64,000 nucleotides of DNA, from positions 282,857 through 346,856 of the IMG/VR virus record IMGVR_UViG_3300027759_000045; one strand, 5' to 3'. Position 1 is the first letter of the stretch, and every line of letters begins with the position of its first letter. A model generated the notes under the pieces. The model saw only the letters and a program-made list of their open reading frames with translations, made no database searches and was not told the origin of the DNA. Positions 18,321 through 62,722 of the stretch are shown one piece after another. A program made the translations under genes and the position numbers.

Positions 18321-18614
18321 ATGCCAAACGTACAACGACAGGGTGACACAAACTCAGTAGGCGGAGCAGCCGGGGCAGGAGTGGCATCTGTGCGAGTAAA
18401 TGGCATACCTATTGTGGTTGACGGTACCAGTGTTTCGGCCCATGCACCATGGCCTCAACGTAGATACAACCCGCACCCACCACACGCTGCCGCAGGCACT
18501 GCTGGCGGCAGTGGCACAGTACGTGCCGGCGGCAAACCTGTTGTTAGAACAGGAGACGCTGACACATGTGGACATGCTCGTGTAGGCGGCAGTCCTGACG
18601 TAAGGGCAGGATAA
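18321..18614 (+). CDS. PAAR-repeat spike-tip protein (T4 gp5.4-like)
   Basis: QRQGD..VRVNGIP, VRAGGKPVVRTGD..CGH; TAAATA at 18297. Confidence 0.9.
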   Translation: MPNVQRQGDTNSVGGAAGAGVASVRVNGIPIVVDGTSVSAHAPWPQRRYNPHPPHAAAGTAGGSGTVRAGGKPVVRTGDADTCGHARVGGSPDVRAG

Positions 18615-20677
18615 TGGCCGGATCATTGTCGCCACTGCAACTGCAAGCTGCTGCTGGTTTATTTCAAAATCAAGGCTACATTATTGTTGCAAATTTAACT
18701 GCCAATGTTAATGCATATAACTCAACTGCGTTGTTGACTCCTTTGATAAATGCCATCGGCAATGCAGGACCCGCCGCCGGGAATTTAACACCAGAAACAA
18801 TAGCGTCACTACAAACATTTGCCAACACCACTTGCCCTGCACTAGCCGATTCCATAGTGGCCAACATTGTAGCACCTGTATCAACCACATTGAGTAATCC
18901 TGGAATGTCCGGCATTATTACACTGACCGCAGAAGCGTACATGGGCAACGTCGATCTCAGTATATTTGCACAGAATTTTATTCAGGCAAATAGTTATTGC
19001 TCAACTGTGAATAGTTTTATCAACAGCGCAGTAAACGCCAACGATTATTTAGGTCCTACATTTACTGGCATGGACAATCTTGTCACAGCAGGCCTTACTG
19101 AGATCAATCGTGCCACGGCAGCCACGGGCGATGACTTGTACAATGCTGGTCAATACATTGATCTAGGCAATCTTGACAACTACGGAACCCCGTTGGCACT
19201 GATACAACAGATATCTCGTCGTGCTGGAACCATTAGTCCGTTGATCTCAGTATTGAGCACAGCCGGCGTGCCCGATAACATTATTCTCAATCTCAATGAT
19301 CCTGCTGTGGTAGTTACTGACACTGTGCAAAAACTTATGTATAACGCATTGCTTGGTGTCACCGGTGACGAACTTGCAAATATATTAAGAATCCTAGATG
19401 TATGGACTCCAAACATCAACACATTGGCAGACTTATTGAATCCTGCTGTGATGTTGCCCAACAGTTATCCATCGCTGACAACACCAACTGCAGATGGTCC
19501 ACGTGCTATTTACATCACTGCTCCGGTGGAACCACCTGTTGACTACGATAATTTAACCCCTGAACAGAGTCAGTTAATACTCGACGAAGAAGCTGCCGTG
19601 AGAGCAATTGATCGTCCACTGGCCTGTGAGATACGTCAAAGTGAAAATCCAGTCACTGCAGGATCCACTGCCAGTCCTGTTACAGGAGACACTTCCGGCA
19701 ACACAGGATCTGGCAATCAATACACACCCAATAGTGCATTGTTACCAGCAGTGGCCGGCGACCAAGCTGGCATAAGTTATGAGCGACTGAGCGTGATGAC
19801 AACGCCAGGACTGGCACTGGTCAACAAAGCATTATCCTGCTCACTTGACCAAGTTACCAATATTGGTCGTATGAATTTACCACAGTTGTCTGCGGCATTT
19901 TTAGCAGCCGAGACCAACAAAGGGTTGCCAGCAATCCTAGACCAGACTGCTCCATTACCAACTGCAGACGTAAGCTACTATGCAAATAGTATAGCAACAG
20001 GATCTGGCGTAAATGGAACTATATTGTTGACTGATATTCTTGGAACTCCAGCAACCCAGAATGTTGCTGACAATATTGGAAACTGTGTTGCTATTATTAA
20101 TAATTTGCAAACAGCAAATGCATTGGGTAATTTGATTACCATATACAATGGCATATACGCAAACACAATTGCGTCAGACGAGGCCAATGTATTGTTGTTG
20201 ATTCCAATAGCAGTGACTGAGATTGGAAATATTATTGCTGCCTACCCTACAGAAACGGCCAGTCTTAACACAAACTTTTCAGCAATCAGCACACAGATAA
20301 CAAAAGAAACTGAATTACAAGTTCGAGCAGGTATGGATGTTGGCAATGTACTAGGCAATAACCAATCGGCTATTATGAGTTTTGTGTCGTCGCTACCGAG
20401 TTTTGGGCTTGACACCAAAGTAGGCGGTTCAGCGCAGTATCTAGAACTTGTGGCCAACATTGATTTGTCAACTGCCAATACCATTGCTGAAACAAGTGCA
20501 GGTCAATCTACTGTGGCAGTGCTACGTGAAGGCCGCACAACAGCCGCCCTTAATGTTGCAGGTGTAGGGACATCAGCTACCACTGTGGACCCAATACCAT
20601 CAACTCCGCCTCCGCAAGCTGTGTTAAGCAGTTCTAGAATCTTTGAAAGAGAAGCGCAGAGTCAAGTAATTTATTAA
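18614..20677 (+). CDS. Large probable virion/baseplate protein (687 aa)
   Basis: Translationally coupled to PAAR; Ala/Thr/Asn-rich. Confidence 0.6.
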   Translation: MAGSLSPLQLQAAAGLFQNQGYIIVANLTANVNAYNSTALLTPLINAIGNAGPAAGNLTPETIASLQTFANTTCPALADSIVANIVAPVSTTLSNPGMSGIITLTAEAYMGNVDLSIFAQNFIQANSYCSTVNSFINSAVNANDYLGPTFTGMDNLVTAGLTEINRATAATGDDLYNAGQYIDLGNLDNYGTPLALIQQISRRAGTISPLISVLSTAGVPDNIILNLNDPAVVVTDTVQKLMYNALLGVTGDELANILRILDVWTPNINTLADLLNPAVMLPNSYPSLTTPTADGPRAIYITAPVEPPVDYDNLTPEQSQLILDEEAAVRAIDRPLACEIRQSENPVTAGSTASPVTGDTSGNTGSGNQYTPNSALLPAVAGDQAGISYERLSVMTTPGLALVNKALSCSLDQVTNIGRMNLPQLSAAFLAAETNKGLPAILDQTAPLPTADVSYYANSIATGSGVNGTILLTDILGTPATQNVADNIGNCVAIINNLQTANALGNLITIYNGIYANTIASDEANVLLLIPIAVTEIGNIIAAYPTETASLNTNFSAISTQITKETELQVRAGMDVGNVLGNNQSAIMSFVSSLPSFGLDTKVGGSAQYLELVANIDLSTANTIAETSAGQSTVAVLREGRTTAALNVAGVGTSATTVDPIPSTPPPQAVLSSSRIFEREAQSQVIY

Positions 20678-21226: not shown

Positions 21227-21252
21227 ATAAACCCACTTGAAAGTGGGTTTAT
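21227..21252. terminator. Hairpin terminator
   Basis: Perfect inverted repeat ATAAACCCACTT-ga-AAGTGGGTTTAT; T-tract on the minus strand. Confidence 0.85.
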
Positions 21253-21426
21253 GTGGTACCGTGTGTTTCGTGATACCGTTTAAGCGCCAGCATTCTGGCC
21301 ACGTATAATCTATATTGAACGTAATCGGAAAGTTCGTCGTCCGGAACTAGTTGTCCAAACTCTGCGCTTCTCCGATTACGCCCAAATTTGACTTCATCAT
21401 CTATGACAAAGTCTTCATCATCAAGA

Positions 21427-21639
21427 TTATTTCGCGGCTGGAGTAGCGGCTTTGCTGTCTGCTTTAGGTGCGTCTTTCTTAGCAGGCTCACTTTTTGCAG
21501 GCGTTGCTGTCGCAGGAGCGGCAGGGGCTGTGGCAGCAGGTTTGGCTTCTGCTTTCTTTTCTTCTTTCTTGGCAGCAGGTGCTTGAGCAAATGCAGAAAG
21601 AGCAACAGTGGTGGCGATTAAAGCGATAAGTTGTTTCAT
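21427..21639 (-). CDS. Exported Ala/Lys/Pro-rich small protein
   Basis: AAGGAG SD; signal peptide MKQLIALIATTVALSAFA-Q. Confidence 0.8.
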   Translation of the reverse strand: MKQLIALIATTVALSAFAQAPAAKKEEKKAEAKPAATAPAAPATATPAKSEPAKKDAPKADSKAATPAAK

Positions 21640-21715
21640 GGTATCTCCTTGATTAGAAACTGTAGACCTGGACTTTCCTGGCTACACATATATAACGCCA
21701 CAGCCTGCACATCGG

Positions 21716-21744
21716 TTGACACAGAATTGGTATTTTGTTATAAT
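21716..21744 (+). promoter_or_regulatory. sigma70 early promoter P1
   Basis: TTGACA-17 bp-TATAAT. Confidence 0.85.
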
Positions 21745-21772
21745 TTGGGCATATAGTAAAAAAAAGGCACAT

Positions 21773-22174
21773 ATGGAATTGCACGTTGAAGCCGGACCCA
21801 AAACCAAACGCTACATTGAAGCACTGGTTCCCAGCATGTTGGCCCAGCTTGGACTTGCTAAAAATCAAAAATTGCTGATGATCAAAGTGGACCCTGATCT
21901 AGATGAATTGGGCACCACAATTCCCTTGACAGGAATTGACACTTACTTGGTGGTGTTAAAACCCACTAGAGATCTGTATGCCCTGGGCGTTACCCTGGCC
22001 CATGAGCTGGTGCATGTACGACAGATGGCTAGAGGCATACTAAAAATCATGCCAAAAGGCAAAAAATGGCGGGGCAAATACTATGGCAGAAATGTGGCAT
22101 ATTTACAACAGCCCTGGGAATTAGATGCCTTTGCCCGGCAAGAAATTGTGTTTCGCAGAGCAATTGAGTTGTGA
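21773..22174 (+). CDS. Zincin-like metallopeptidase
   Basis: LAHELVHVRQ (HExxH), PWELDA; start at MELHVE after an AAGG SD. Confidence 0.75.
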   Translation: MELHVEAGPKTKRYIEALVPSMLAQLGLAKNQKLLMIKVDPDLDELGTTIPLTGIDTYLVVLKPTRDLYALGVTLAHELVHVRQMARGILKIMPKGKKWRGKYYGRNVAYLQQPWELDAFARQEIVFRRAIEL

Positions 22175-22180
22175 TTTCGG

Positions 22181-22209
22181 TTGACCAATAATTCCCGAAC
22201 TGCTATAAT
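22181..22209 (+). promoter_or_regulatory. sigma70 early promoter P2
   Basis: TTGACC-aataattcccgaactgc-TATAAT. Confidence 0.85.
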
Positions 22210-22215
22210 CATAGT

Positions 22216-22449
22216 ATGAAATTAGATACAAATGAAATTTTGCAGTGGGCCGGGGCTATTTTTATAGTAGCAGGCCATAGCCTAAATGCAGTGGGTCCAA
22301 CAGCCCATCCTTACAATATCCTTACATTTTTTATTGGGACTATTTTGTTCCTGATCTGGACTGTGCGTGTTGCAAATAAACCACAGATGTTTGTAAATCT
22401 TGTAAGTGTTGCAATTGGGCTGATTGGGCTGATAAAAGCCATTGGTTGA
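22216..22449 (+). CDS. Small multi-TM membrane protein
   Basis: Three hydrophobic segments; ATG 6 nt after the -10 box. Confidence 0.75.
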   Translation: MKLDTNEILQWAGAIFIVAGHSLNAVGPTAHPYNILTFFIGTILFLIWTVRVANKPQMFVNLVSVAIGLIGLIKAIG

Positions 22450-22474
22450 CCGAATATTGCCCTTTTGCTATAAT
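22446..22474 (+). promoter_or_regulatory. sigma70 early promoter P3
   Basis: TTGACC-gaatattgcccttttgc-TATAAT. Confidence 0.85.
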
Positions 22475-22504
22475 ATAGCATAGTTTAACAAAAAGGAGCC
22501 AAAA

Positions 22505-22834
22505 ATGACTTTAAGATACGAAACAGTTGGTGAAATGATTACTCAAAACGAACAAGAAAAATCAATCCGCGTCGCGGTTGGACGAGACATGCAACGTCAA
22601 CGTGAAATTGGCATGTATGGCATCACCGAAGCTGACATGTGTGAAAACATCGAATCTTCGATCACATTCAAAACTTCGGGTCCTGCAATGATTGTGGCCA
22701 GCTTGATGAGTGATGCACAAGAGATGATGGCTTACGAAAAGCCCAATTCCCGCACTATTGAAGCTCAGCGTCAACTGCTCAATCGTGCTAAATTTGTCTT
22801 GTTTACCTACATCATGGACAAACAAAACGGTTGA
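22505..22834 (+). CDS. Hypothetical early protein (109 aa)
   Basis: AAGGAG SD. Confidence 0.75.
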   Translation: MTLRYETVGEMITQNEQEKSIRVAVGRDMQRQREIGMYGITEADMCENIESSITFKTSGPAMIVASLMSDAQEMMAYEKPNSRTIEAQRQLLNRAKFVLFTYIMDKQNG

Positions 22835-22859
22835 CCCGAAATTCCCAAACTGTTATAAT
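22831..22859 (+). promoter_or_regulatory. sigma70 early promoter P4
   Basis: TTGACC-cgaaattcccaaactgt-TATAAT. Confidence 0.85.
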
Positions 22860-22889
22860 ACTTGTATAGAAACTAAAAAGGATTCCGAA

Positions 22890-23243
22890 ATGACAGCAAT
22901 AGCAACACAGATCACAGAGCAGTTGGTACAAGATGCAACCAATGAAGCAGGCATTCAGGCACGTACAGCGGCCAAGGCATTCCACGCCAAACATGGCGAT
23001 CGTGATGCTTGTGGATTTGCTTGGGTCAATGTGTTTGGCGTTCGCTCAAACTCAAAATTGGGCAAGTGGTTGCAGGCCGCAGGCTTCCGTAAGGACTACA
23101 CAGGTGCATTGAGCCTGTGGAACCCCAGTGGCTTCCCAACACAGAGCATCAGCATTTTGGAAGCAGGTGCAGAAGCCTATGCCGAAGTACTGAAGACCAA
23201 ACTGGGCCTGACACAGGTCTACGCCGGAAGCAGATTAGATTGA
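22890..23243 (+). CDS. Hypothetical early protein
   Basis: AAGGA SD before MTAIATQ; CGFAWV motif. Confidence 0.75.
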   Translation: MTAIATQITEQLVQDATNEAGIQARTAAKAFHAKHGDRDACGFAWVNVFGVRSNSKLGKWLQAAGFRKDYTGALSLWNPSGFPTQSISILEAGAEAYAEVLKTKLGLTQVYAGSRLD

Positions 23244-23272
23244 TTGACCGATAATTCCCAAACTGCTATAAT
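23244..23272 (+). promoter_or_regulatory. sigma70 early promoter P5
   Basis: TTGACC-gataattcccaaactgc-TATAAT. Confidence 0.85.
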
Positions 23273-23301
23273 ATACACATAGTAAGAAAAAAGGAAAAAA
23301 G

Positions 23302-23502
23302 ATGTCAAGTTTTGCCGAAGATGTATTTGCAATTAATCCCAATATCACAGCAGAGAATGATGTTCTTGCACTAGGGTTTGAGGTTGTAAAAAAAGCACAA
23401 GGACTCAAGTCCGCCCGGTACTATTTTTGGTACCATGAAGATTTCCCTTCAGATTTAATTAATGAATATTTTTGGTTGCAACAACAGAAAGAGGTAGCGT
23501 AA
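23302..23502 (+). CDS. Hypothetical early protein (66 aa)
   Basis: AAGGA SD. Confidence 0.7.
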   Translation: MSSFAEDVFAINPNITAENDVLALGFEVVKKAQGLKSARYYFWYHEDFPSDLINEYFWLQQQKEVA

Positions 23503-23503
23503 A

Positions 23504-23980
23504 ATGGGTACACGTTCAAGAATTGGTGTCATGCACGGCGACGTTTGTAAATCAGTCTACTGTCACTGGGACGGCTATCTGGACCACAATGGTGTAATAT
23601 TGCAAGAGCACTATTATGACAGTGCCAAAGCCAACCACCTGGTGTCACTGGGCGACATTTCTTCTTTGGCTCGCAACATTGACTTTCCAGATGGCGAGTT
23701 TCATACTTTTGGTTCTCCTATGGAAAATGTAACTGTGTTTTACGGTCGTGACCGTGATGAAGACGGCACAGATTTTGCAACAGATCATACCTTTGAAGCG
23801 TTCTTTGAACGTGCCAAAAATTGCGGTGCAGAGTGGTATTACATTATGAAAGATGGTGTATGGTACGTGGGCAATACACATGAAAATGACGCCCGGTATT
23901 ACCAAAAGTTGGTGTTGTTATTGAAGGCCTTAGTGGACGAAATGGAAGTCAGCAAGACCTGGGACTCAGTTGACCTGTAA
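23504..23980 (+). CDS. Phage early protein (YCHWDGY motif)
   Basis: MGTRSRIG..YCHWDGY; GAGG SD. Confidence 0.75.
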   Translation: MGTRSRIGVMHGDVCKSVYCHWDGYLDHNGVILQEHYYDSAKANHLVSLGDISSLARNIDFPDGEFHTFGSPMENVTVFYGRDRDEDGTDFATDHTFEAFFERAKNCGAEWYYIMKDGVWYVGNTHENDARYYQKLVLLLKALVDEMEVSKTWDSVDL

Positions 23981-23998
23981 TTCCCAAACTGCTATAAT
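23970..23998 (+). promoter_or_regulatory. sigma70 early promoter P6
   Basis: TTGACC-tgtaattcccaaactgc-TATAAT. Confidence 0.85.
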
Positions 23999-24029
23999 AC
24001 ACACATAGTAAACGAAACAGGAGCCTGAG

Positions 24030-24302
24030 ATGGATATCAAAGAAATTAACTCTGCAATTATGTTTGGTAATTTGACCAATGATCAGTTGTCCAGTGTGAT
24101 TGATGCAGTGAAGTTTGCCCGAGCGCAACTGACCCAACAAAAGAAACGCAGTTTCTCAATCGGCGACAAGGTAAAGTTTACCAGCAATCGCAATGGATTG
24201 ACATACGTTGGCAACGTTCGTAAAGTTAAAATTAAATTTGTGCTGGTTAGTACGCCAGGCGGTGTGTTCAATGTGCCAGCCAACATGTTGGAGACAGCAT
24301 GA
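24030..24302 (+). CDS. Hypothetical early protein, SH3-like C-terminus
   Basis: AGGAG SD; FSIGDKVKF..GNVRKV. Confidence 0.75.
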   Translation: MDIKEINSAIMFGNLTNDQLSSVIDAVKFARAQLTQQKKRSFSIGDKVKFTSNRNGLTYVGNVRKVKIKFVLVSTPGGVFNVPANMLETA

Positions 24303-24478
24303 ACAACAAGATCTTCAGTTACAAAATGCAGATGCAACTGACCGAACAAGAACTGGCCCAGTTCCGTGCCGCGTTTGCCGAGTTACAAAATGAAGTAACA
24401 GAAATATTCTTAGAAACAGAACAGCACAATGGCTTTCAAGCCGCCAATAAAGTGATCAATCGTGTTCGGAACAGGTAA
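24299..24478 (+). CDS. Hypothetical protein (59 aa), not in ORF track
   Basis: MNNKIFSYKMQMQLTEQELAQFRAAF..; ATGA overlap and GGAG SD. Confidence 0.65.
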   Translation: MNNKIFSYKMQMQLTEQELAQFRAAFAELQNEVTEIFLETEQHNGFQAANKVINRVRNR

Positions 24479-24520
24479 GTGCCCGCACCTAGTTTCCGTC
24501 AACAAATCAGGAGAAAGACA

Positions 24521-24943
24521 ATGGGACTTGACATGTATGCATACGTGGCCGCAAAGGAAGGCCAACAACGTGAGTTTTATGAGAGTGCCGAATTTGATGA
24601 TGATACCAAAGATTTTGTTAACAAGACAGTAGAACAGCCTCGTGAGATTGCTTACTGGCGCAAGCATCCTAATCTGCATGGCTGGATGGAACAACTTTGG
24701 AAAAGTCGCAATGGCGGCAACTGTGATGGCAGCAACTTCAACGGCATTGAGTTAGAACTTACATGGGCGGATCTTGAAGCACTTGAACTGGATGTCATTG
24801 CTGGCACACTGCCCAGTACGTCAGGTTTCTTTTTTGGCAATGAAGCAGATGAACACTATCGAGAACAAGATCTCAAGTTTGTCCGCGACGCTCGTGCAGA
24901 ATTGTTTTGTGGATTGAAAGTATTTTACAATAGTAGTTGGTAA
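24521..24943 (+). CDS. Phage early protein (GLDMY/YWRKH motifs)
   Basis: AGGAG SD before MGLDMYAY. Confidence 0.75.
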   Translation: MGLDMYAYVAAKEGQQREFYESAEFDDDTKDFVNKTVEQPREIAYWRKHPNLHGWMEQLWKSRNGGNCDGSNFNGIELELTWADLEALELDVIAGTLPSTSGFFFGNEADEHYREQDLKFVRDARAELFCGLKVFYNSSW

Positions 24944-24949
24944 CATCAT

Positions 24950-25375
24950 ATGAAAATTGGACTTAGTTATAGCCGTTGCGTTCTAGACATTGTCGAAGGT
25001 CGTGTGGCCATTGAAGATGTGCTGGTATTAATCACTCGTACAGATTTTAATCCATGTGATGACGAACAGTGGGCAGGGATCTGGGATGGATACACCTTGG
25101 GTAGATTAAGCAATCCTGAATGGGGTCACTATGACTTTAACAGCAAGGACGACGAGGACAAGTTCCGTAGTGTGAGCTGTATGCTGTACGAAGATGGCAG
25201 AATGCATCAGCCTCGACAGTTTGGAGCTCGCCCAAGACGTCGACCCGAAATCTGGTTGGAAACAGTATTGCCTGACAGTGAGCTGGAATCTCGACCCGCT
25301 GTGAAAGATGCCTGGGATCAGTTTCAAACTCTAGCCGGTTTGACCAATGTCAAGCTAGACCGAGAATATCAATGA
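24950..25375 (+). CDS. Hypothetical protein (141 aa)
   Basis: ORF track; operon packing. Confidence 0.7.
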   Translation: MKIGLSYSRCVLDIVEGRVAIEDVLVLITRTDFNPCDDEQWAGIWDGYTLGRLSNPEWGHYDFNSKDDEDKFRSVSCMLYEDGRMHQPRQFGARPRRRPEIWLETVLPDSELESRPAVKDAWDQFQTLAGLTNVKLDREYQ

Positions 25376-25836
25376 AGAAAATCTATTACGAAAAAAAAGG
25401 CCGCAGGTATGTGCCTGTGAGTGAGTACGACAGCGAGTACTTGGACAGTTTCTCTCGAGGCACACATCTTGTAATGTGCTATCCGGGCGGACAGAGTCGT
25501 CGTTTCAATATTGATCCTGCTTATGCTCCTATGATTGCCGCTGGCCGTGTTGCTGAAGAAGCTATCTGCGAGGTGATTCGCAAAGTTAGCGAACTACGTC
25601 CACAACAAACTCCTATCACTCTGGGACAAAAGAAAGCCTGGGAGAAATTGGCCAAAGAATTTGGCAGCGAACTTGCCACATTGTCTGGGCTATGCATACG
25701 TGACTGTGCCGAAGCAGGGGTCAAGGCCATGCAGGCAGAAGCTGACAAATTGATGAAGCACGAAAGTGTTCGAGTGGCATATGAGCAATTCCTATTGGTA
25801 TGTAAACTAACACAATCTGACTCAGAACGAAAATAA
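25372..25836 (+). CDS. Hypothetical protein (154 aa)
   Basis: ATGA overlap. Confidence 0.7.
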   Translation: MKKIYYEKKGRRYVPVSEYDSEYLDSFSRGTHLVMCYPGGQSRRFNIDPAYAPMIAAGRVAEEAICEVIRKVSELRPQQTPITLGQKKAWEKLAKEFGSELATLSGLCIRDCAEAGVKAMQAEADKLMKHESVRVAYEQFLLVCKLTQSDSERK

Positions 25837-25840: not shown

Positions 25841-27214
25841 ATGAATGAAACAAACTTCTCAGACCCAAGGTTTGCGGGCACAATGGTAACAGGTTGGATT
25901 CATGACCTGGAAAGCTCGGACAGTCGAATACACAAAGAAAAAACTATTGAAAAGGCATTGGTAGCCGCCCAGTTGGGCAGTTCTGATGCACAGGCCTTCT
26001 TGTTCAATTGTTATCAGGCCTACAACCCTTTTTATGTGTTTGGCATCCGACAAGTGCCCGAGACTGAGGGCTTAACTGGTCAATCAAATCCATGGCCTAA
26101 GTTTTGGGCGTTGTTGGAAAGTCTACGTACCCGTAGCGTCACAGGTAATCGAGCACGTGAGGCCATTGATGAATGTAGCCAACAGTTTGACAGTGAAGAA
26201 TGGAACAACGTATGTCGTCGTGTCATTATTAAAGACCTGCGTTGTGGGATATCAGAGAAGACACTGAACAAAGTTCTGGGCCGAACTGAATGGAAGATCC
26301 CGGTGTTCAGTTGCCAACTGGCACAGGACAGTACAGACCATCCTAAGAAACTTCGAGGCATCAAACGTCTGGAAGTCAAGCTGGATGGTGTGCGTGTGTT
26401 GGCAGTTGTGAATGGATCTGCGTGTACATTGTACAGCCGTAATGGCAAAGAGTTTGAGAACTTCCCACAGATTGCAGACTTTATTGAAGAACATCGCAAA
26501 GCATTCCAACGTGATTCTGCCTTTGGCGGACAGTTTGTGTTGGATGGTGAGATTGTGGGCAAGAATTTCCAGGACTTGATGAAACAAGCACAACGCAAAC
26601 GAGATGCCAAAACCACAGACATGATTTATCATGTATTTGATATCTTGCCACTGAGTGAGTTCCGCGATGGTTTCTGTAATCTACAGCAACACAACCGTAT
26701 CGATCTGTTGAAACGTACACAAACACACCTGCCAGAATCTGGCTGTGTGCAGATCATGCCCGGCATGGATGTGGACTTGGACACAGCCGAAGGACATGAT
26801 GTCATGCGCAGGTTTGCCGAAGCCAGTGTGGAAGAAGGCTACGAAGGTATCATGATCAAAAGCATGGATGCGCCATATGAGTGCCGACGCAGTGACTTTT
26901 GGATGAAATGGAAACCCACAATCACAGTTGATCTCAATATTGTAGGTTTTGAAGAAGGAACTGGTCGCAATCAGGGCCGGTTGGGTGCTATAATATGTGA
27001 AGGAGTTGATAATGACAGAAATATTCGTGTTAATGTTGGTAGCGGTTTGTCTGATAGCAATCGCGATGAGTATTGGGCCGCTCGCGATGAGCTTCTTGCT
27101 CGGGTGGTTGAGGTTGAAGCGGACGCAGTTACTCAAAACCAAGACGGATCATACAGTTTGAGATTTCCTCGCTTTGTGCGATTCCGTGGATTTGAACCAG
27201 GAGAGAAATTGTGA
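25841..27214 (+). CDS. lig: ATP-dependent DNA ligase
   Basis: EVKLDGVR, LDGEI, EGIMIK, WMKWKP, OB-domain SLRFPRF. Confidence 0.95.
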   Translation: MNETNFSDPRFAGTMVTGWIHDLESSDSRIHKEKTIEKALVAAQLGSSDAQAFLFNCYQAYNPFYVFGIRQVPETEGLTGQSNPWPKFWALLESLRTRSVTGNRAREAIDECSQQFDSEEWNNVCRRVIIKDLRCGISEKTLNKVLGRTEWKIPVFSCQLAQDSTDHPKKLRGIKRLEVKLDGVRVLAVVNGSACTLYSRNGKEFENFPQIADFIEEHRKAFQRDSAFGGQFVLDGEIVGKNFQDLMKQAQRKRDAKTTDMIYHVFDILPLSEFRDGFCNLQQHNRIDLLKRTQTHLPESGCVQIMPGMDVDLDTAEGHDVMRRFAEASVEEGYEGIMIKSMDAPYECRRSDFWMKWKPTITVDLNIVGFEEGTGRNQGRLGAIICEGVDNDRNIRVNVGSGLSDSNRDEYWAARDELLARVVEVEADAVTQNQDGSYSLRFPRFVRFRGFEPGEKL

Positions 27215-31051: not shown

Positions 31052-32251
31052 ATGATCTCTAAAACAACACCTACACATTGTAATTTTTGTAACAAGCACA
31101 AAGACCAAGTGGGCAAACTGATTGTAGGACACAATGTTGGTATATGCAACGAGTGTGTGGAATTCTGTCACGGGCTGTTGCTGTCAAAAGAACATGCTGT
31201 AAAATCTACTGTACAGTCTGTACTAGACCCACGTGAGATACACCAGTACCTGGATCAATATGTGATTGGACAGTCCGGTGCCAAGATTGTGTTAAGTGTA
31301 GCAATTACCAATCACTACAAACGAATTGGTAATCCAGATCCCCAAAACGAAATACAAAAAGCCAACATCTTAATGACTGGGCCAACCGGCACAGGTAAAA
31401 CACTTATGGCTCGCACAGTGGCCCGGTACTTGGATGTGCCGTTTGTTATTGCAGACGCCACAACACTGACAGAAGCAGGATATGTAGGTGACGATGTTGA
31501 CAGTTTAATTGCTAGACTATTCCATGCCAGCGGCAACGATGTTGAACGCACACAACGTGGAATTGTGTTCCTAGACGAAGTAGATAAGATTGCTCGCAAA
31601 GGTGAAAGTAGTACTGTATCACGTGATGTGAGTGGCGAAGGTGTTCAACAAGCACTGCTTAAACTGATCGAAGGCACACGATGTAAAGTGCCAAATCAAG
31701 GAGTGCGCAAAACATCCAGCAGTGAAACAATTGACATTGACACTGCCAACATACTGTTTATTGTAGGTGGTGCATTTGTTGGACTAGACAAAGTGATCAA
31801 AGCACGTACACAAGGCACGTCGATTGGGTTTGGCGCCAGCACTGTCAAAGAAAATGTATCCGAAGCAATCACACCCGACGATTTAGTACGTTATGGAATG
31901 ATTCCAGAGTTTGTGGGACGGTTCCCATCTATTATACAGTTGGAAGAACTAACTAAATCTCAACTTATTACTATTTTGACAGAAGTAAAAAACAACTTGG
32001 TCAGTCAGTACAGATGGTTGTTTAACCAGGATGGTGTGGCCCTGGACTTTGATGCCGACAGTATAGACCTAATTGCAGAACGCACAATCACCACAAAAAC
32101 TGGTGCTCGTGGATTACACACAGAACTCGAACGTGTACTCTTGCCCCATATGTACAACTTAAAAGATTATCAGTCTCGCAATATTTTAAAAATTGCCATT
32201 GATAAAACACAAGTTACTACTCCTATCCGATTAGAACAACAAAATTCGTAA
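31052..32251 (+). CDS. clpX: ClpX ATPase
   Basis: C4 zinc domain, GPTGTGKT, DEVDKI, RDVSGEGVQQALLK, IGF loop. Confidence 0.95.
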   Translation: MISKTTPTHCNFCNKHKDQVGKLIVGHNVGICNECVEFCHGLLLSKEHAVKSTVQSVLDPREIHQYLDQYVIGQSGAKIVLSVAITNHYKRIGNPDPQNEIQKANILMTGPTGTGKTLMARTVARYLDVPFVIADATTLTEAGYVGDDVDSLIARLFHASGNDVERTQRGIVFLDEVDKIARKGESSTVSRDVSGEGVQQALLKLIEGTRCKVPNQGVRKTSSSETIDIDTANILFIVGGAFVGLDKVIKARTQGTSIGFGASTVKENVSEAITPDDLVRYGMIPEFVGRFPSIIQLEELTKSQLITILTEVKNNLVSQYRWLFNQDGVALDFDADSIDLIAERTITTKTGARGLHTELERVLLPHMYNLKDYQSRNILKIAIDKTQVTTPIRLEQQNS

Positions 32252-32309
32252 CAGATCAGTTGACACAGCACTCAGCATGTGTTATAATTCATTATTATAA
32301 GGAAACACT

Positions 32310-54862: not shown

Positions 54863-56137
54863 ATGAAACAAAGTAATTTATACTGTATTTTGGCCGACAA
54901 AGGACTGGGCTTGCACAATTCTGGCCGAACGTATCTGTGCTGCCACAGTAGAAAATACCTAGAAGATGCACAGGGTGAACAGATATATCTAGACACCCAC
55001 ACGTTAGAACAGGCGTGGACCAGCCCTACACGCAGAGAAATACAAGAATCTTTGGAAAACAATCAAGAGCATGCTAGTTGCCAGGCCTGCTGGGACGATG
55101 AACACGCCGGCAAAAAGTCACGCAGACAGTGGCACAACGGTATGAATCATCCTGTGACTGACCGTGATGATCAGCCGCAAATACTAGATTTAAAAATGGG
55201 CAACACCTGCAACATGAAATGCAGAACCTGTAACCCAGAAGTGTCCAGTCAATGGTATCGAGAAGATTGGGAATTGGCAGCACAGCCTGCAGAAGGCGTT
55301 TCATATTCCGAGTATCTCAAACGCTGGCGCAGAATTCCTGCCAGTTATAGTGACAACAATCAAGACCTTTGGAACACCATGAGCAAGTGGGTGCCCAACA
55401 CAGTGTACATTGACTATTACGGTGCAGAGCCCATGCTGATCAAAAAGAACTTTGATGTGTTACAGACCGCAGTGGATCAAGGCACAGCAAAAAACATAGA
55501 CTTGCATTTTAGCACCAATGGCACTGTTTGGAATGATGAGTTAGAAAACTTATTAAAACAATTTAAACAAGTTTACTTTGATTTGAGCATCGATGACATT
55601 GAAGATAGGTGTGGATATATTCGCTATTCTAGTACCTGGGATCTGGTGGCCAGCAATCTTGAACGATTCCTACAGGCACAACGCACAAACAAAAACTTTC
55701 AATTTGGCGTGTGTATCACTGTCAACAGTTTGAATGTGTATTACCTGGATGAGATATTTGATTTCTTTGCAAAGAAAGGACTAGGCTGCAACTTCAACAT
55801 GTTGCACTTGCCATATCAACTGTGCGTGAAAAGTTTGCCTGATGCTGTTAAAACCGCAATCACTGATAAATTGTCAAAGTATGTGACGGGAGATGATATT
55901 GGGCCGTGGCACCAACGCTACTGGAAAGACCATTGTGAAATTGTGTTGAACTTTTTGAATACGCCAATGGAAGGACAACAGCATCACTTCCGGGAATTTC
56001 ATCGCTATACTCGCGGACTTGATCTCAGTCGTGACCAAACATTTGAAACAGCCTTACCTGAATTTGCAGAGTTAATCAAGCCGTGGTTTGCACCGCTTGA
56101 TCAGTTGCTTGTGGTTGATTCTCCAGTTTCAAAGTGA
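54863..56137 (+). CDS. Radical SAM protein with N-terminal Twitch-like domain
   Basis: YC..LCC..CQACW; MGNTCNMKCRTC; YGAEP. Confidence 0.9.
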   Translation: MKQSNLYCILADKGLGLHNSGRTYLCCHSRKYLEDAQGEQIYLDTHTLEQAWTSPTRREIQESLENNQEHASCQACWDDEHAGKKSRRQWHNGMNHPVTDRDDQPQILDLKMGNTCNMKCRTCNPEVSSQWYREDWELAAQPAEGVSYSEYLKRWRRIPASYSDNNQDLWNTMSKWVPNTVYIDYYGAEPMLIKKNFDVLQTAVDQGTAKNIDLHFSTNGTVWNDELENLLKQFKQVYFDLSIDDIEDRCGYIRYSSTWDLVASNLERFLQAQRTNKNFQFGVCITVNSLNVYYLDEIFDFFAKKGLGCNFNMLHLPYQLCVKSLPDAVKTAITDKLSKYVTGDDIGPWHQRYWKDHCEIVLNFLNTPMEGQQHHFREFHRYTRGLDLSRDQTFETALPEFAELIKPWFAPLDQLLVVDSPVSK

Positions 56138-56796: not shown

Positions 56797-57420
56797 ATGC
56801 CTAATTTAGTACCTATTGTTCTAGAACAAACTGCCAAAGGCGAACGTTCATATGACATCTACAGTCGACTGCTACGTGACCGTGTGATCATGCTGGACAC
56901 AGAAGTCAGCGAACATTCAGCCAGTTTAATTGTGGCACAGATGCTGTTCTTGGAAAGCGAAAATCCTGACAAGGATATCTCATTGTACATCAATTCACCT
57001 GGCGGTGCTGTCACAGCCGGCCTGGCCATTTACGATACCATGCAGTTTATCAAATGCGATGTACAGACCATTGTGCTGGGCCAGGCTGCAAGTATGGGAT
57101 CCATGTTGGCACAAGCAGGTGCCGCAGGTAAACGTATGGTGCTACCCGAAGCACGTACAATGATACACCGTGTGAGTTCTGGCACACCGGGCACACGTGG
57201 TTCAGTTCATGTGCAGGATCTGCAGTTCGAAGATTCAAAACGTGCGTTTGAAGAAAGTGTACGAATAAATAAACGTCTTACCGAGCTGTACGTCAAGCAC
57301 AACACCGCCAGCAAGACCTATGAAGAACTGTATGAAACTATGAAGTTTGATACATTCTTAAGCGCACAGCAAGCAGTTGATTTTGGACTTGCTGATAAAA
57401 TTATTGAAAAACGAGTTTAA
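56797..57420 (+). CDS. clpP: ClpP protease
   Basis: [35 protein letters not shown]. Confidence 0.95.
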
Positions 57421-58718: not shown

Positions 58719-59112
58719 TCAATCGATCAATGTTAAAATTAACTTGCGTCCTGTTGGTATGCCGAATATCAGTGTGTCAATCAATCAAACAATGTTTGAA
58801 TATACTGTATTATTAAATCCTGTTGTGTTGGAATATCGGGTAGGATTATTGGATAATATCAATATTATTATAAAATTATATGATAAAGAATATGATATCA
58901 ATAACAAAACTGCGGTAATAATTGATAATATTGTTATTGATAATATTGATATTGTTCCTAAGTTTGATTATCTGGCAGAGTACATTAATGATCACAACAA
59001 TAACAATCCCACCAGTTACTTGGGATTCAATGGCACATGGCAATTGAATATCGATCAGCCATTTTATCATTGGTTACACAAACACACTGGCCAAGGTTGG
59101 CTTTTAACATAA
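58687..59112 (+). CDS. Hypothetical AT-rich protein (141 aa)
   Basis: ORF track; overlaps the radical SAM 3' end. Confidence 0.65.
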   Translation: MKTYSDLQDIDQSINVKINLRPVGMPNISVSINQTMFEYTVLLNPVVLEYRVGLLDNINIIIKLYDKEYDINNKTAVIIDNIVIDNIDIVPKFDYLAEYINDHNNNNPTSYLGFNGTWQLNIDQPFYHWLHKHTGQGWLLT

Positions 59113-59125: not shown

Positions 59126-59210
59126 ATAGATAATCGATAATATTATCTATAATCCCCCAAGGTAATACTCAAGTATTACCTTTTTTTTGTGGTTTTTTTA
59201 CCACAAAAAA
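59126..59210. repeat. Three consecutive inverted repeats
   Basis: ATAGATAAT/ATTATCTAT, GGTAATACT/AGTATTACC, TTTTTTGTGGT/ACCACAAAAAA. Confidence 0.85.
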
Positions 59211-59214: not shown

Positions 59215-59243
59215 TTGACCAGAAATTCTCGATTTGCTATAAT
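59215..59243 (+). promoter_or_regulatory. sigma70 early promoter P7
   Basis: TTGACC-agaaattctcgatttgc-TATAAT. Confidence 0.85.
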
Positions 59244-59249
59244 ACTTGT

Positions 59250-59588
59250 ATGGAACTTAAAAAGCAATCACGTAAAAAACGCACCGACCGTACTCACATC
59301 ATTTATATGATTGAAAGCGGCACAGACTTCTACATTGGCGTCACTGCCAAGACAATGAGCACTGTGAAGAAGAGCGTGTTGGTTCGTTGCAACAAGCACA
59401 TGTACCGCATGCGCTCGGAAGACAAATCATGGATGCTGTATGAGACCATGCGTGAACGTGGTACTGACGCATTCACTGTTCGTGTTGTGGCTGTGGTTCG
59501 TGGCAAAGCAGAAGCACACACTGTTGAACGTGACATGATCCGTACTATGAAACCTAACCTTAACACTGATACTCGTGGTGTTGCGTAA
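59250..59588 (+). CDS. GIY-YIG nuclease family protein
   Basis: HIIYMI..FYIGVT..R..H..E; ATG 6 nt after the -10 box. Confidence 0.75.
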   Translation: MELKKQSRKKRTDRTHIIYMIESGTDFYIGVTAKTMSTVKKSVLVRCNKHMYRMRSEDKSWMLYETMRERGTDAFTVRVVAVVRGKAEAHTVERDMIRTMKPNLNTDTRGVA

Positions 59589-59606
59589 AAGCAACAGAAA
59601 GAACAT

Positions 59607-59747
59607 ATGAAACGGTTTATTATTTCTGCAATTTTAATGGGCGTTGTCACAGTGGCATCTGCTCAAAAACCCCGGTGTATGAAATGGACTTGGTATAACA
59701 TTGACGGTGTTCAGCACACGGTATGCCTGCTGTGGGCCAATCGTTAA
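59607..59747 (+). CDS. Small exported disulfide-hairpin peptide (46 aa), not in ORF track
   Basis: MKRFIISAILMGVVTVASA-QKPRCMKWTWYNIDGVQHTVCLLWANR. Confidence 0.7.
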   Translation: MKRFIISAILMGVVTVASAQKPRCMKWTWYNIDGVQHTVCLLWANR

Positions 59748-59752
59748 AACGG

Positions 59753-59781
59753 TTGACCCGAAATTGCCAATTTGCTATAAT
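59753..59781 (+). promoter_or_regulatory. sigma70 early promoter P8
   Basis: TTGACC-cgaaattgccaatttgc-TATAAT. Confidence 0.85.
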
Positions 59782-59811
59782 ATAGCATAGTTTAACAAAA
59801 AGGAATAGAAA

Positions 59812-60087
59812 ATGAAAGCACTTACTGCATACATTGATCGTCAAAACAAATACCAGGCCCTGTTCCGAGGCCAACGTACAGAACCCCTGTACGAAGTCAC
59901 CACTGCCGCAGGCCGCAAGCGTGTGGCAGACATGATTGATTGCGCACTGAGCCCTGAAAATCTTTCATGTGATGGCGAACTGCCTCGTGCAGAAGTTAAC
60001 CGTCGCTATCGTGAACTCACAGCGGCCGCAAAGGATCTGATCAAGTTGGATCCTACTATGGCTCAACACATGTACGAATTTGGTTGA
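59812..60087 (+). CDS. Hypothetical early protein (91 aa)
   Basis: AAGGA SD; LSPENLSCDGE. Confidence 0.75.
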   Translation: MKALTAYIDRQNKYQALFRGQRTEPLYEVTTAAGRKRVADMIDCALSPENLSCDGELPRAEVNRRYRELTAAAKDLIKLDPTMAQHMYEFG

Positions 60088-60112
60088 CCCGAAATTGCTG
60101 ATTTGCTATAAT
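60084..60112 (+). promoter_or_regulatory. sigma70 early promoter P9
   Basis: TTGACC-cgaaattgctgatttgc-TATAAT. Confidence 0.85.
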
Positions 60113-60142
60113 ATGAACATAGTAAGAAATAAGGAGCTCGAA

Positions 60143-60508
60143 ATGGAACAGTTTAAAAGTTGGGAAGAGTTGACAGAGTTGGAACAGGCTCAGGCCACCT
60201 ACTGGGACATGTACAAGGATGCCCATAACTTCCGTCCACGTCACGTTGACACCAGCACCTGGACCCTGGCTGACTTTGATCGCGAGTTCACAGAATTGGG
60301 TCAGATCATGACAGCCAACCATGAGGCAGAGCAAATTGCCCAGGCCGCGGCAGTAGAAGCATTCGAACGCCGTGTAGCAGAGATGCTGACACTGGGTGCC
60401 AAAGACATAGAAATGGCCATGCGTTGGATTCACGAAGCCGAAGACACCAACGGTGATGAAGACTACCTTGCATGGACTCTGGGCTTGCCTTACAGATATT
60501 TTGCGTAA
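60143..60508 (+). CDS. Hypothetical early protein (DMYKDAHNFRPR motif)
   Basis: AAGGAG SD before MEQFKSW. Confidence 0.75.
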   Translation: MEQFKSWEELTELEQAQATYWDMYKDAHNFRPRHVDTSTWTLADFDREFTELGQIMTANHEAEQIAQAAAVEAFERRVAEMLTLGAKDIEMAMRWIHEAEDTNGDEDYLAWTLGLPYRYFA

Positions 60509-60521
60509 CTGGGAGACGGAT

Positions 60522-60725
60522 ATGTCATACGATAAAACACACGGTAGTTGGTATGATCGAGGTGCCGCAGACAATTACTACGGTCGCAGACCCAACCCAC
60601 ATCGTGGCGGTGTAGGTGGCGAATCCGGCCCAAGAATTGAAGCAGGGCATCCTGAAGAAGTTGAGGCCTACATGGCCGGCTATAAAGATAACGAAGCCTC
60701 TGGCGATAAGAAAGATTGGAACTGA
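60522..60725 (+). CDS. Hypothetical protein
   Basis: GGAG SD; MSYDKTHGSWYDRG. Confidence 0.7.
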   Translation: MSYDKTHGSWYDRGAADNYYGRRPNPHRGGVGGESGPRIEAGHPEEVEAYMAGYKDNEASGDKKDWN

Positions 60726-60726
60726 T

Positions 60727-60888
60727 ATGAGCAAGATGAGCGATTTAACTGTGGAAATTTCTGACATGCTGGAAGCAGGCTACTTGCCTGTGACAGTGGC
60801 TAGACTGTTGGAAATCCCTGTGAACTGGGTTTACGAAACTGCTGATCCAGAAGAAGAACTTAGCCCTTTTCAAACTGTGAATTCCTAA
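60727..60888 (+). CDS. Hypothetical protein (53 aa)
   Basis: MSKMSDL..; abuts the upstream stop. Confidence 0.65.
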   Translation: MSKMSDLTVEISDMLEAGYLPVTVARLLEIPVNWVYETADPEEELSPFQTVNS

Positions 60889-60898
60889 GGAGAACACA

Positions 60899-61932: not shown

Positions 61933-61955
61933 TAGACTCTGAGTCTATCTAATAG

Positions 61956-61983: not shown

Positions 61984-61986
61984 GGC

Positions 61987-62712: not shown

Positions 62713-62722
62713 TGTTGATCCA

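What the first reader, a model, noticed from the sequence alone, without database searches (positions are those of the whole stretch)
21713..24030. Array of promoter-bounded early gene cassettes (second block at 59215-60143)
Seen: nine sigma70 promoters share not only TTGAC(C) and TG(C/T)TATAAT but also spacer sequence (e.g. aattcccaaactg, aaattgc..tttg), and each heads one or a few small genes. The upstream gene's stop is embedded in the TTGAC box (22449, 22834, 60087), abuts it (23243) or lies in the spacer (23980). Established: PeSL regulatory cassettes mediate modular shuffling in T4-type phages. Inference: an integron-like, recombination-shuffled library of host-takeover or anti-defence genes with the promoter as the crossover unit.
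Basis: partly seen in the sequence, partly recalled or inferred. Interest (0 to 1): 0.6.

Follow-up and report, generated by a model that had tools for sequence, protein, structure and literature searches.

The report
Shuffled early-promoter gene cassettes, jumbo phage
An uncultured 347-kb freshwater phage related to T4 carries rows of tiny unknown genes, each behind its own near-identical strong promoter. Comparison with 80 relatives shows these promoter-plus-gene units are gained, lost and moved around the genome, much like the PeSL cassettes already described in T4-type phages.

Summary
Nine near-consensus sigma70-type promoters lie on the + strand (11 pattern hits against 0.25 expected by chance). 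They share GGTTGACC, a conserved AATTCCC spacer core, TGCTATAAT and a roughly 30-nt leader with a strong ribosome-binding site.

The window is the last 64 kb of a 346,856-bp IMG/VR jumbo phage with a T4 gp23-type capsid.

In 80 related loci, the slot between a conserved 687-aa gene and the ligase holds 0 to 7 promoter-headed cassettes drawn from about 30 unrelated ORFan families.
- Empty sites carry one chimeric promoter.
- Five cassette families sit at different promoter arrays in different genomes.
- Promoter junctions are mosaic breakpoints 2-3 times more often than other gene junctions.

There are limits to the recombination reading.
- About 65-80% of gene-content differences lie at junctions without a promoter.
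- The spacer consensus is conserved across the whole clade, which points to functional constraint.
- The genome encodes no integrase or resolvase, and there are no attC-like hairpins.
- Internal units lack the PeSL stem-loop.

Verdict: this is a PeSL-like early-promoter cassette array, a new variant of a known kind, and it is not integron-like. The functions of the cassette genes are unknown.

The parts
18614..20677 (+). Conserved 687-aa gene ('BIG'), the left anchor of the variable slot
   Evidence: Present in nearly all 80 related loci. No Pfam match.
21227..21710 (-). Minus-strand insert: a 70-aa signal-peptide, low-complexity ORF (21427-21639) with its own terminator (21227-21252)
   Evidence: Absent from L011/L033; the homology break lies at 21226/21710, abutting promoter 1.
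21716..21772 (+). Promoter unit 1 (TTGACA, 17-nt spacer, TGTTATAAT) plus leader
21773..22174 (+). g1, 133 aa, small HExxH zincin-like putative metallopeptidase
   Evidence: Weak DUF6782 hit and two PHROGs of unknown function. Atlas neighbours are M78/SprT-like.
22181..22215 (+). Promoter unit 2; ATG lies 6 nt after the -10 box (leaderless candidate)
22216..22449 (+). g2, 77-aa membrane protein (DUF6552-like); its stop is the TGA of the next TTGAC
   Evidence: The family recurs in other array contexts.
22446..22504 (+). Promoter unit 3 plus leader; 84% identical to unit 59753, with a 34-nt exact match
   Evidence: Chimeric relative to the two units in L020.
22505..22834 (+). g3, 109-aa ORFan; its stop is the TGA of the next TTGAC
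22831..22889 (+). Promoter unit 4 plus leader
22890..23243 (+). g4, 117 aa, PHROG 22149 (unknown function)
23244..23301 (+). Promoter unit 5 plus leader
   Evidence: Shares a 22-nt exact match with unit 6.
23302..23980 (+). Two-gene cassette g5 (66 aa) plus g6 (158 aa, PHROG 1987); absent as a block in L028/L030/L032
23970..24029 (+). Promoter unit 6 plus leader; heads the conserved g7-g9 run before the ligase
   Evidence: Homology with L013 and similar loci starts exactly at 23970.
24030..25836 (+). g7, g8, g9, g10 and g11, tightly coupled genes with no strong promoter between them; g10-g11 are lost in relatives at junctions without a promoter
25841..27214 (+). ATP-dependent DNA ligase, the right anchor
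59159..59210 (+). Two terminator hairpins immediately upstream of promoter 7 (head of the array)
   Evidence: Fold z-score -5.4.
59215..59249 (+). Promoter unit 7; ATG lies 6 nt after the -10 box (leaderless candidate)
59250..59588 (+). 112-aa GIY-YIG-like small nuclease candidate
   Evidence: PHROG homing-endonuclease families at E 7e-6 to 6e-4. The Pfam GIY-YIG model found no match at E <= 0.001.
59607..59747 (+). 46-aa signal-peptide ORF; absent in L092/L093, with the right breakpoint exactly at promoter 8
59753..59811 (+). Promoter unit 8 plus leader
59812..60087 (+). 91-aa cassette gene (family 38). In relatives G001-G003 and in L013 and similar loci it sits in the BIG-ligase slot
60084..60142 (+). 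Promoter unit 9 plus leader
60143..60508 (+). 121-aa gene, PHROG 21968 (unknown function)

Best explanation
The two blocks are arrays of strong host-sigma70-type, presumably early, promoter-leader units in hyperplastic regions of a T4-superfamily jumbo phage. Each unit drives one or two small accessory ORFan genes.

A unit has these elements, in order:
- GG followed by TTGACC.
- A 17-nt spacer with a conserved AATTCCC core.
- TGCTATAAT.
- Either a roughly 30-nt leader with an AAAAGGAG ribosome-binding site, or an ATG placed right at the predicted transcript start.

The units abut the preceding gene, and its stop codon is often the TGA of TTGAC. Inside an array there is no terminator, so transcription is additive along the row. 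A terminator usually precedes only the first unit.

Because every cassette starts and ends in the same 30-60 nt of sequence, general homologous recombination can delete, insert or move whole promoter-plus-gene cassettes without damaging neighbours. The phage encodes a RecA/UvsX-like protein, and recombination could occur within one genome or between co-infecting relatives. This is the PeSL mechanism of T4-type phages.

What is shown: the architecture, the hypervariability, the chimeric junctions and the relocation of cassettes.

What is inferred: promoter activity and early timing, that promoter homology rather than selection alone places the crossovers, and any role of the cassette genes.
For: Promoters:
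- 11 hits against 0.25 expected.
- 24-27 per genome, all on one strand, in G000.
- 17-27 per genome, all on one strand and clustered, in five near-complete relatives.

Conserved unit: the clade-wide consensus, with start codons 56-62 nt after the -35 start, comes.

Hypervariable slot: 0-7 cassettes from about 30 families lie between the same anchors.

Precise promoter-flanked indels with a single chimeric unit at the empty site:
- Window g2|g3 against L020.
- L035 against L013, which has a long perfect direct repeat (about 54 nt in the printed alignment).
- L032 against the window.
- Overall, 24 unique events have a promoter on both sides and one promoter at the empty site.

Breakpoint enrichment:
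- At 85% identity or more, 53% of promoter units are breakpoints against 24% of other junctions. At 90% or more the figures are 26% against 8%.
- Density per kb is 7.9 at promoter units, 3.8 at other junctions and 0.32 inside genes.
- Conservation of gene adjacency at 80-90% ligase identity is 10% at promoter junctions against 51% elsewhere.

Relocation:
- Five families found in the slot in relatives sit behind other promoters in G000.
- Family 38 lies in the slot in G001-G003 but in a block-2-like array in G000, G004 and G005.
- Its similarity does not follow the ligase: 87% to G004 (ligase 74%) against 82% to G001 (ligase 92%).
- DNA homology of moved cassettes runs from -35 box to next promoter unit (family 38) or from -35 box to near the gene end (family 55).

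Other points:
- Adjacent units are more alike than shuffled order predicts (0 of 5000 permutations).
- A RecA-family gene is present.
- The cassette genes are not paralogues of each other.
Against: - About 65-80% of gene-content differences in these loci lie at junctions without a promoter, which are ATGA or TAAnATG overlaps with no repeat.
- Among the closest genome pairs, only 1 of 5 differences touches a promoter.
- Exact homology between units in this genome is short, 6-22 nt for most pairs and 34 nt at most.
- Units within one genome are not significantly more alike than units from different genomes (55.4% against 53.2%; 109 of 1000 permutations reach the observed value).
- The spacer consensus is conserved across phages with only 74% ligase identity. 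The shared spacer is therefore mostly selected for function and is not evidence of recent copying.
- Comparisons between loci are not phylogenetically independent.
- There are no expression data and no raw reads. The promoter-to-promoter joints seen in contigs have sides of only 24-31 nt.
Confidence: 0.68

Rival explanations
1. The units are purely regulatory. Each is just a strong early promoter, and its extended consensus is fixed by selection for RNA polymerase capture. Mosaic breakpoints fall on them only because they are the sole non-coding DNA between dispensable, fast-turnover early genes. Recombination is illegitimate or uses microhomology, and selection keeps only products with intact genes.
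For: - The spacer and leader consensus is conserved clade-wide.
- There is no significant homogenisation within genomes.
- Most indels occur at junctions without a promoter or any repeat.
- Most pairs of units share short exact homology.
- T4 early promoters also show consensus outside the core elements (PMC2988021).
Against: - A 2-3-fold excess of breakpoints remains relative to other gene junctions, which are equally 'safe' places to break.
- The events are scarless, leaving one full-length chimeric unit.
- A long perfect direct repeat flanks a polymorphic cassette in L013.
- Relocated cassettes always arrive with a unit on both sides.
- Adjacent units are more alike than chance.
Confidence: 0.24
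2. This is a site-specific, integron-like or otherwise enzyme-directed cassette system. A dedicated phage protein recognises the invariant GGTTGACC / AATTCCC part of the unit and cuts or exchanges cassettes there. The protein could be, for example, the small GIY-YIG-like nuclease at 59250-59588.
For: - Positions outside the RNA polymerase contact elements are conserved: GG before the -35 box and the AATTCCC spacer core.
- A GIY-YIG-like gene sits directly behind one unit.
- HSP ends cluster at the two edges of the unit.
Against: - The genome has no tyrosine integrase and no serine recombinase.
- The GIY-YIG assignment is weak. The Pfam model finds no match at E <= 0.001, and the gene is rare among relatives.
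- The units have no structured site (z-scores -1.6 to +0.75).
- Crossover points inferred from chimeras lie at different places within the unit.
Confidence: 0.05
3. The arrays arose by tandem duplication of one promoter-gene unit followed by divergence.
For: The arrays are head-to-tail, and adjacent units are slightly more similar than non-adjacent ones.
Against: The cassette proteins show no similarity to each other even at E <= 1. They fall into about 30 separate families.
Confidence: 0.02

Closest known systems
PeSL (promoter-early stem-loop) cassettes of T4-type phages phi1/RB49, PST/T4 and nt-1/KVP40 (Arbiol et al. 2010, PMC2839356; Comeau et al. 2014, PMC4122927)
   Same: - Repeated near-consensus sigma70 promoters with a ribosome-binding site and start codon at the 3' end.
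- Concentrated in hyperplastic regions directly upstream of ORFans.
- Uninterrupted rows of promoter-separated small genes; nt-1 has a row of six.
- Indels and replacements between relatives are bounded by the units, with one unit left at the empty site.
- The host phage has a T4 gp23-type capsid.
   Different: - Internal units here have no stem-loop or terminator and no AT-rich upstream tract.
- They are fused to the preceding gene, whose stop is often the TGA of the -35 box.
- Hairpins occur mainly at the heads of arrays (34 of 57 heads against 9 of 86 internal units).
- The spacer core and leader are conserved.
- The phage belongs to an uncultured ~320-365-kb freshwater clade whose capsid is closest to Phosso, Vibrio 2.275.O and PA5oct, not to a classical T4-like phage.
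- Mini-circles are not shown here.
T4 early promoters, described as 'über' UP/-35/TGn/-10 promoters (Hinton 2010, PMC2988021)
   Same: - -35, TGn and -10 elements combined in one promoter.
- Additional consensus positions outside the core elements.
- They head non-essential early genes of unknown function.
   Different: - There is no UP element here.
- The consensus differs: TTGACC and an AATTCCC spacer.
- Activity and any modification-dependent stimulation are untested.
SPO1 host-takeover module (from my own knowledge of Stewart et al. 1998; mentioned in PMC6873191 and PMC10531801)
   Same: A dense cluster of small early genes served by many strong host-sigma promoters and strong ribosome-binding sites.
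   Different: The SPO1 module lies in the terminal redundancy, and shut-off functions are known for several of its genes. Here neither location at a terminus nor any function is shown, and the emphasis is on turnover of cassettes among relatives.
Integron cassette arrays
   Same: Head-to-tail rows of unrelated single-gene cassettes with variable content at a fixed genomic slot.
   Different: - No IntI-type recombinase.
- No attC hairpin sites.
- Every cassette carries its own promoter, whereas integron cassettes are promoterless and read from a common Pc.

Membership tests
PeSL regulatory cassettes (T4-type phages) | Strong sigma70-like promoter, with -35 and -10 near consensus, repeated many times in the genome | tested here: met
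   Nine exact pattern matches in the window against 0.25 expected. 24-27 in G000, all on one strand. 17-27 in each of five relatives. This is sequence-level evidence only.
PeSL regulatory cassettes (T4-type phages) | Stable stem-loop (terminator or attenuator) as part of each unit | tested here: not met
   Eight of nine window units fold no better than shuffles (z -1.6 to +0.75). Only the unit at 59215 has hairpins upstream (z -5.4). Across 143 contexts, a terminator-like hairpin precedes 34 of 57 array heads but only 9 of 86 internal units.
PeSL regulatory cassettes (T4-type phages) | AT-rich tract upstream of the -35 box | tested here: not met
   The upstream sequence is coding DNA. Only a short TTT before GG is conserved.
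PeSL regulatory cassettes (T4-type phages) | Shine-Dalgarno sequence and start codon of the downstream gene at the 3' end of the unit | tested here: met
   Start codons lie 56-62 nt after the -35 start, with an AAAAGGAG-type site, in about 100 of 143 contexts. A minority look leaderless.
PeSL regulatory cassettes (T4-type phages) | Located in hyperplastic regions, directly upstream of ORFans | tested here: met
   Slot content varies from 0 to 7 cassettes. Cassette proteins have no informative family.
PeSL regulatory cassettes (T4-type phages) | Indels and replacements between related phages are bounded by the units, with one chimeric unit at the empty site | tested here: met
   Three-way alignments. 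24 events flanked on both sides. 2-3-fold enrichment over other junctions. The association is not exclusive: most differences lie at junctions without a promoter.
PeSL regulatory cassettes (T4-type phages) | Excised mini-circles carrying one unit and the cassette | tested here: inconclusive
   Only Logan contigs were available. Promoter-to-promoter skips (22468 to 22854) and one back-joint (22501 to 22178) have sides of 24-31 nt and may come from relatives.
PeSL regulatory cassettes (T4-type phages) | Demonstrated promoter activity and early timing | not testable with these tools
   No RNA run holds the stretch. The host is uncultured and unknown.
PeSL regulatory cassettes (T4-type phages) | Host genome belongs to the T4 superfamily | tested here: met
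   The Gp23 capsid family matches at E 8e-98. The nearest cultured capsids are those of jumbo phages Phosso, Vibrio 2.275.O and PA5oct at 68-72% identity, so the relationship is distant.
Integron | IntI-type tyrosine recombinase next to the array | tested here: not met
   No PF00589 match anywhere in the 346,856-bp genome; the control genomes all match. No resolvase either.
Integron | attC sites: structured imperfect inverted repeats at cassette ends | tested here: not met
   The junction units show no significant folding.
Integron | Promoterless cassettes expressed from one common promoter | tested here: not met
   Every cassette has its own full promoter unit.
Homing-endonuclease-driven gene mobility | A homing endonuclease gene (GIY-YIG or HNH) adjacent to the mobile segment | tested here: inconclusive
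   One 112-aa GIY-YIG-like ORF at 59250-59588 matches PHROG homing-endonuclease families weakly (E 7e-6). The Pfam GIY-YIG model finds no match at E <= 0.001. There is none in block 1.

The most novel reading that the evidence does not exclude
The conserved positions that RNA polymerase does not obviously need are the GG before the -35 box, the AATTCCC spacer core and the fixed leader. These could be recognised by a dedicated phage factor, making the units true portable exchange sites. On this reading, at least five promoter arrays per genome form one network across which single-gene cassettes circulate through a whole clade of more than 400 freshwater jumbo phages. That would be a promoter-based, integrase-free counterpart of an integron gene library. 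The stop codon built into the -35 box would keep every insertion in-frame-safe.
Probability: 0.1. Interest if true: 0.75.

Novelty: new variant of a known kind. Interest (0 to 1): 0.45.

Why it matters
This extends promoter-associated modular shuffling, so far shown for a few cultured T4-like phage pairs, to a large uncultured clade of ~320-365-kb freshwater jumbo phages. It rests on far more comparative depth: 80 loci and about 30 cassette families at a single slot.

The data show that the stem-loop is dispensable for the pattern. They also show that the promoter consensus itself is under clade-wide selection.

The analysis puts a number on how much of the gene turnover is promoter-associated: roughly 20-35%, a 2-3-fold excess. 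This tempers the idea that such units are the main engine of plasticity.

The arrays also mark out a compact, self-expressing library of small early ORFans. These are natural candidates for host-takeover or anti-defence screens.

Tried and rejected
- **DNA search of cultured phages.** Searching the block against 50,697 cultured phage records found nothing. The ligase finds only matches below 60% identity, the best listed about 37%.
- **Anchors for block 2.** The two radical-SAM genes are themselves rare, with only 2 and 5 related loci. Block 2 therefore has few comparators. L092/L093 show one indel whose right end lies exactly at promoter 59753.
- **Crude HSP-end analysis.** At low identity thresholds this did not separate promoter junctions from other junctions. 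Only high-identity HSPs did.
- **Concerted evolution within genomes.** The test was not significant.
- **Linkage of spacer or leader to neighbouring gene families.** It is weak at this divergence.
- **Solved-structure searches.** Sequence searches for g1, g4 and g6 gave nothing.
- **ESM Atlas.** It gave only 'hypothetical viral' for g6, and M78/SprT-like neighbours for g1.
- **RNA features.** There are no Rfam families and no tRNAs in the window.
- **Sequencing runs.** The runs are kept only as contigs, so circles, transcript starts and expression could not be assessed. The short-sided joints are not taken as evidence.
- **Closely spaced promoter pairs.** The listed pairs under 200 nt apart hold tiny genes of 32-46 aa, not empty units.
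- **Rejected models.** Tandem duplication is rejected. The integron model is rejected.
Full report
**Context**

The window is bases 282,857-346,856 of a 346,856-bp IMG/VR virus record. The record has 43.6% G+C and a 134-bp terminal direct repeat, so the assembly is effectively circular. Its major capsid protein belongs to the T4 Gp23 family (E 8e-98). The nearest cultured capsids are those of jumbo phages Sinorhizobium Phosso (72%), Vibrio 2.275.O (69%) and Pseudomonas PA5oct (68%). No cultured phage matches the block at DNA level. The stretch occurs in freshwater and lake metagenomes from many studies. The genome encodes a RecA/UvsX-family protein but no tyrosine integrase and no serine recombinase.

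**Observation**

All nine promoters are present on the + strand, at 21716, 22181, 22446, 22831, 23244, 23970, 59215, 59753 and 60084. A pattern that includes two spacer positions gives 11 hits against 0.25 expected.

Aligned, the units share the following elements:
- GG before TTGACC.
- A spacer core AATTCCC.
- TGCTATAAT.
- A conserved start region (ATAGTAA).
- An AAAAGGAG ribosome-binding site about 30 nt after the -10 box.

The stop-codon claims are correct. Genome-wide a position weight matrix finds 26-27 units, and none lies on the other strand. Five near-complete relatives have 17-27 each, again on a single strand and in small clusters.

**Anatomy**

- Seven of the nine window units have the start codon 57-60 nt after the -35 start.
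- Two units (g2 at 22216 and the GIY-YIG-like gene at 59250) have the ATG 6 nt after the -10 box with no ribosome-binding site. These are leaderless-mRNA candidates. The g2 family keeps this arrangement in many relatives.
- The units abut the preceding gene. Among 61 upstream ORFs that end inside a unit, across 143 unique contexts, 45 use the TGA of TTGAC. One third would be expected if reading frames were random.
- Internal units have no terminator (fold z-scores -1.6 to +0.75). Only the head of block 2 is preceded by two strong hairpins (z -5.4).
- Across relatives, terminator-like hairpins precede 34 of 57 array heads but only 9 of 86 internal units.
- Junctions without a promoter in the same region are ATGA or TAAnATG overlaps with no repeated motif.

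**Cassette genes**

They are unrelated to each other (no hit at E <= 1) and almost all are ORFans.
- g1 is a small HExxH zincin-like protein.
- g2 is a DUF6552-like membrane protein.
- g4, g6 and the 60143 gene match PHROGs of unknown function.
- The 59250 gene resembles GIY-YIG nucleases weakly, and the Pfam model finds no match at E <= 0.001.
- Ten cassette families from relatives gave nothing useful.
- Host-takeover or anti-defence roles are therefore plausible by position only.

**Comparative test**

The ligase has 428 relatives in IMG/VR, and 80 loci with 10-kb flanks were analysed. Gene-family maps show a conserved frame: the 687-aa gene, then a variable slot, then promoter-g7-(16)-g9-ligase.

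- The slot holds 0 to 7 promoter-headed cassettes. L072 has none; the window has five before the g7 promoter and L020 has seven. They are drawn from about 30 families in many combinations and orders.
- Three-way alignments of sites with and without a cassette show one full-length unit at the empty site. Its upstream part matches the left unit of the occupied site and its downstream part matches the right unit. Examples are window g2|g3 against L020, L032 g4|g7 against the window, and L035 against L013. In L013 a long perfect direct repeat (about 54 nt in the printed alignment) flanks the polymorphic cassette.
- 24 unique events have a promoter on both sides and one promoter at the empty site.

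**Relocation**

Five families that occupy the slot in relatives sit behind other promoters in this genome:
- Family 38 is window 59812-60087, in block 2.
- Family 55 is at G000:123119.
- Family 103 is at G000:12013.
- Family 72 is at G000:12849.
- Family 89 is at G000:268368.

Family 38 is single-copy in six genomes. It lies 1-2 kb upstream of the ligase in G001-G003, but 34-58 kb downstream in G000, G004 and G005. Its similarity runs against the ligase tree: 87% to G004 (ligase 74%) against 82% to G001 (ligase 92%). DNA homology of the moved family 38 cassette spans exactly from its own -35 box to the end of the next unit. Family 55 runs from its -35 box to near the gene end, about 16 nt short of its stop.

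**How much is due to the promoter?**

- For HSPs of at least 85% identity, 53% of promoter units are breakpoints against 24% of other junctions. At 90% or more the figures are 26% against 8%.
- Density per kb is 7.9 at promoter units, 3.8 at other junctions and 0.32 inside genes.
- Conservation of gene adjacency falls much faster at promoter junctions: 10% against 51% at 80-90% ligase identity.
- Yet 272 of 337 unique presence/absence events, and 65-72% of differences in three divergence bins, involve no promoter.
- The g10-g11 indel has only ATATG microhomology.
- Among the closest pairs, 1 of 5 differences touches a promoter.
- Promoter junctions make up about 9.5% of junctions, so the excess is 2-3-fold. 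This is a real but contributory effect. The comparisons are not phylogenetically independent.

**Why is the spacer shared?**

- Units from unrelated contexts in phages with only 74% ligase identity still agree at 60-70% of spacer positions. Flanking DNA agrees at about 26%.
- The consensus recurs in all five complete relatives.
- Units within one genome are not significantly more alike than units from different genomes. Neighbours in an array are slightly more alike (59.5% against 56.4%; 0 of 5000 permutations).
- The shared spacer is therefore mainly a selected property of the promoter. T4 early promoters likewise have consensus beyond the core elements (PMC2988021).
- The recombination homology it provides is modest in this genome: exact runs of 6-22 nt, with a maximum of 34 nt between 22446 and 59753.

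**Comparison with the known**

PeSLs of T4-type phages are strong sigma70-like promoters with an AT-rich upstream tract, a stem-loop terminator and a ribosome-binding site. They are concentrated before ORFans in hyperplastic regions and are associated with indels and with mini-circles (PMC2839356). Vibrio phage nt-1 has an uninterrupted row of six such ORFs (PMC4122927).

The present arrays match in promoter type, location, ORFan association and indel pattern. They differ in three ways: internal units lack the stem-loop and the AT-rich tract, the units are fused to the upstream stop codon, and they occur in a distant jumbo branch of the T4 superfamily. The integron analogy fails on all three of its defining features.

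**Sequencing runs**

Only Logan contigs were available. They show promoter-to-promoter skips (22468 or 22475 to 22854, in four runs), a 22877-to-24019 skip, and a well-supported 24945-to-25834 deletion that involves no promoter. The sides of the promoter joints are only 24-31 nt, so they may come from relatives. One back-joint (22501 to 22178) may reflect a different arrangement of units in a relative and is not evidence for a circle.

**Verdict**

This is a PeSL-like early-promoter cassette array without internal terminators in an uncultured freshwater jumbo phage clade. It is a new variant of a known kind, of moderate interest.

Noticed in passing
window 22181-22216 and 59215-59250; g2-family loci such as L011:6878-6913: Two units place the ATG 6 nt after the -10 box with no ribosome-binding site. 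These are candidate leaderless mRNAs. The g2 (DUF6552-like) family keeps this arrangement across many relatives.
   Followed up: partly
143 promoter contexts in window and L011-L088: There is a strong frame bias. Of 61 upstream ORFs that end inside a unit, 45 stop at the TGA of TTGAC, so the proteins end in Gly encoded by the conserved GGT. One third would be expected by chance.
   Followed up: yes
window 21227-21710 (- strand): A minus-strand insert lies between the 687-aa gene and promoter 1. It holds a 70-aa signal-peptide protein rich in Ala, Pro and Lys, with its own terminator. It is absent in L011/L033. This stretch draws very high contig depth in metagenomes, probably because of its low complexity.
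   Followed up: partly
L031:7284-8189 and family 44 in about 11 loci: Some relatives carry a Gram-negative porin gene (Porin_4, E 1.8e-15) just upstream of the array. This hints at a Gram-negative host and is an unusual auxiliary gene.
   Followed up: no
window 31052-32251, 54863-56137, 56797-57420, 57420-58718: The phage encodes ClpX, ClpP and two radical-SAM proteins (one with a SPASM domain). The stretch 57421-59105 is replaced by unrelated DNA in L092/L093. Both radical-SAM genes are rare among relatives.
   Followed up: partly
L020:6851-7008, L050:8978-9135, L040:8149-8345, L045:8827-8976: There are micro-cassettes only 131-197 bp from promoter to promoter. They encode peptides of 32-46 aa, including a basic Lys/Arg-rich peptide and a membrane peptide.
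   Followed up: partly
window 24944-25834: g10-g11 are missing as a block in many relatives and in metagenome contigs (run X4, side 67 nt). The junctions lie at compact stop/start overlaps without a promoter and with only ATATG microhomology.
   Followed up: yes
G000:1-17000 and window 59215-64000: The window ends at the arbitrary end of a circular assembly (134-bp terminal repeat). Units of the same type continue at G000 9098, 11978, 12219, 12785 and 16789. Block 2 is therefore part of a promoter-rich region of about 21 kb that spans the record's ends.
   Followed up: partly
window 32260-32288 and 50839 (G000:333695): Further single units of the same class lie outside the two blocks. The one at 32260 follows ClpX directly and heads a 98-aa gene.
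   Followed up: no
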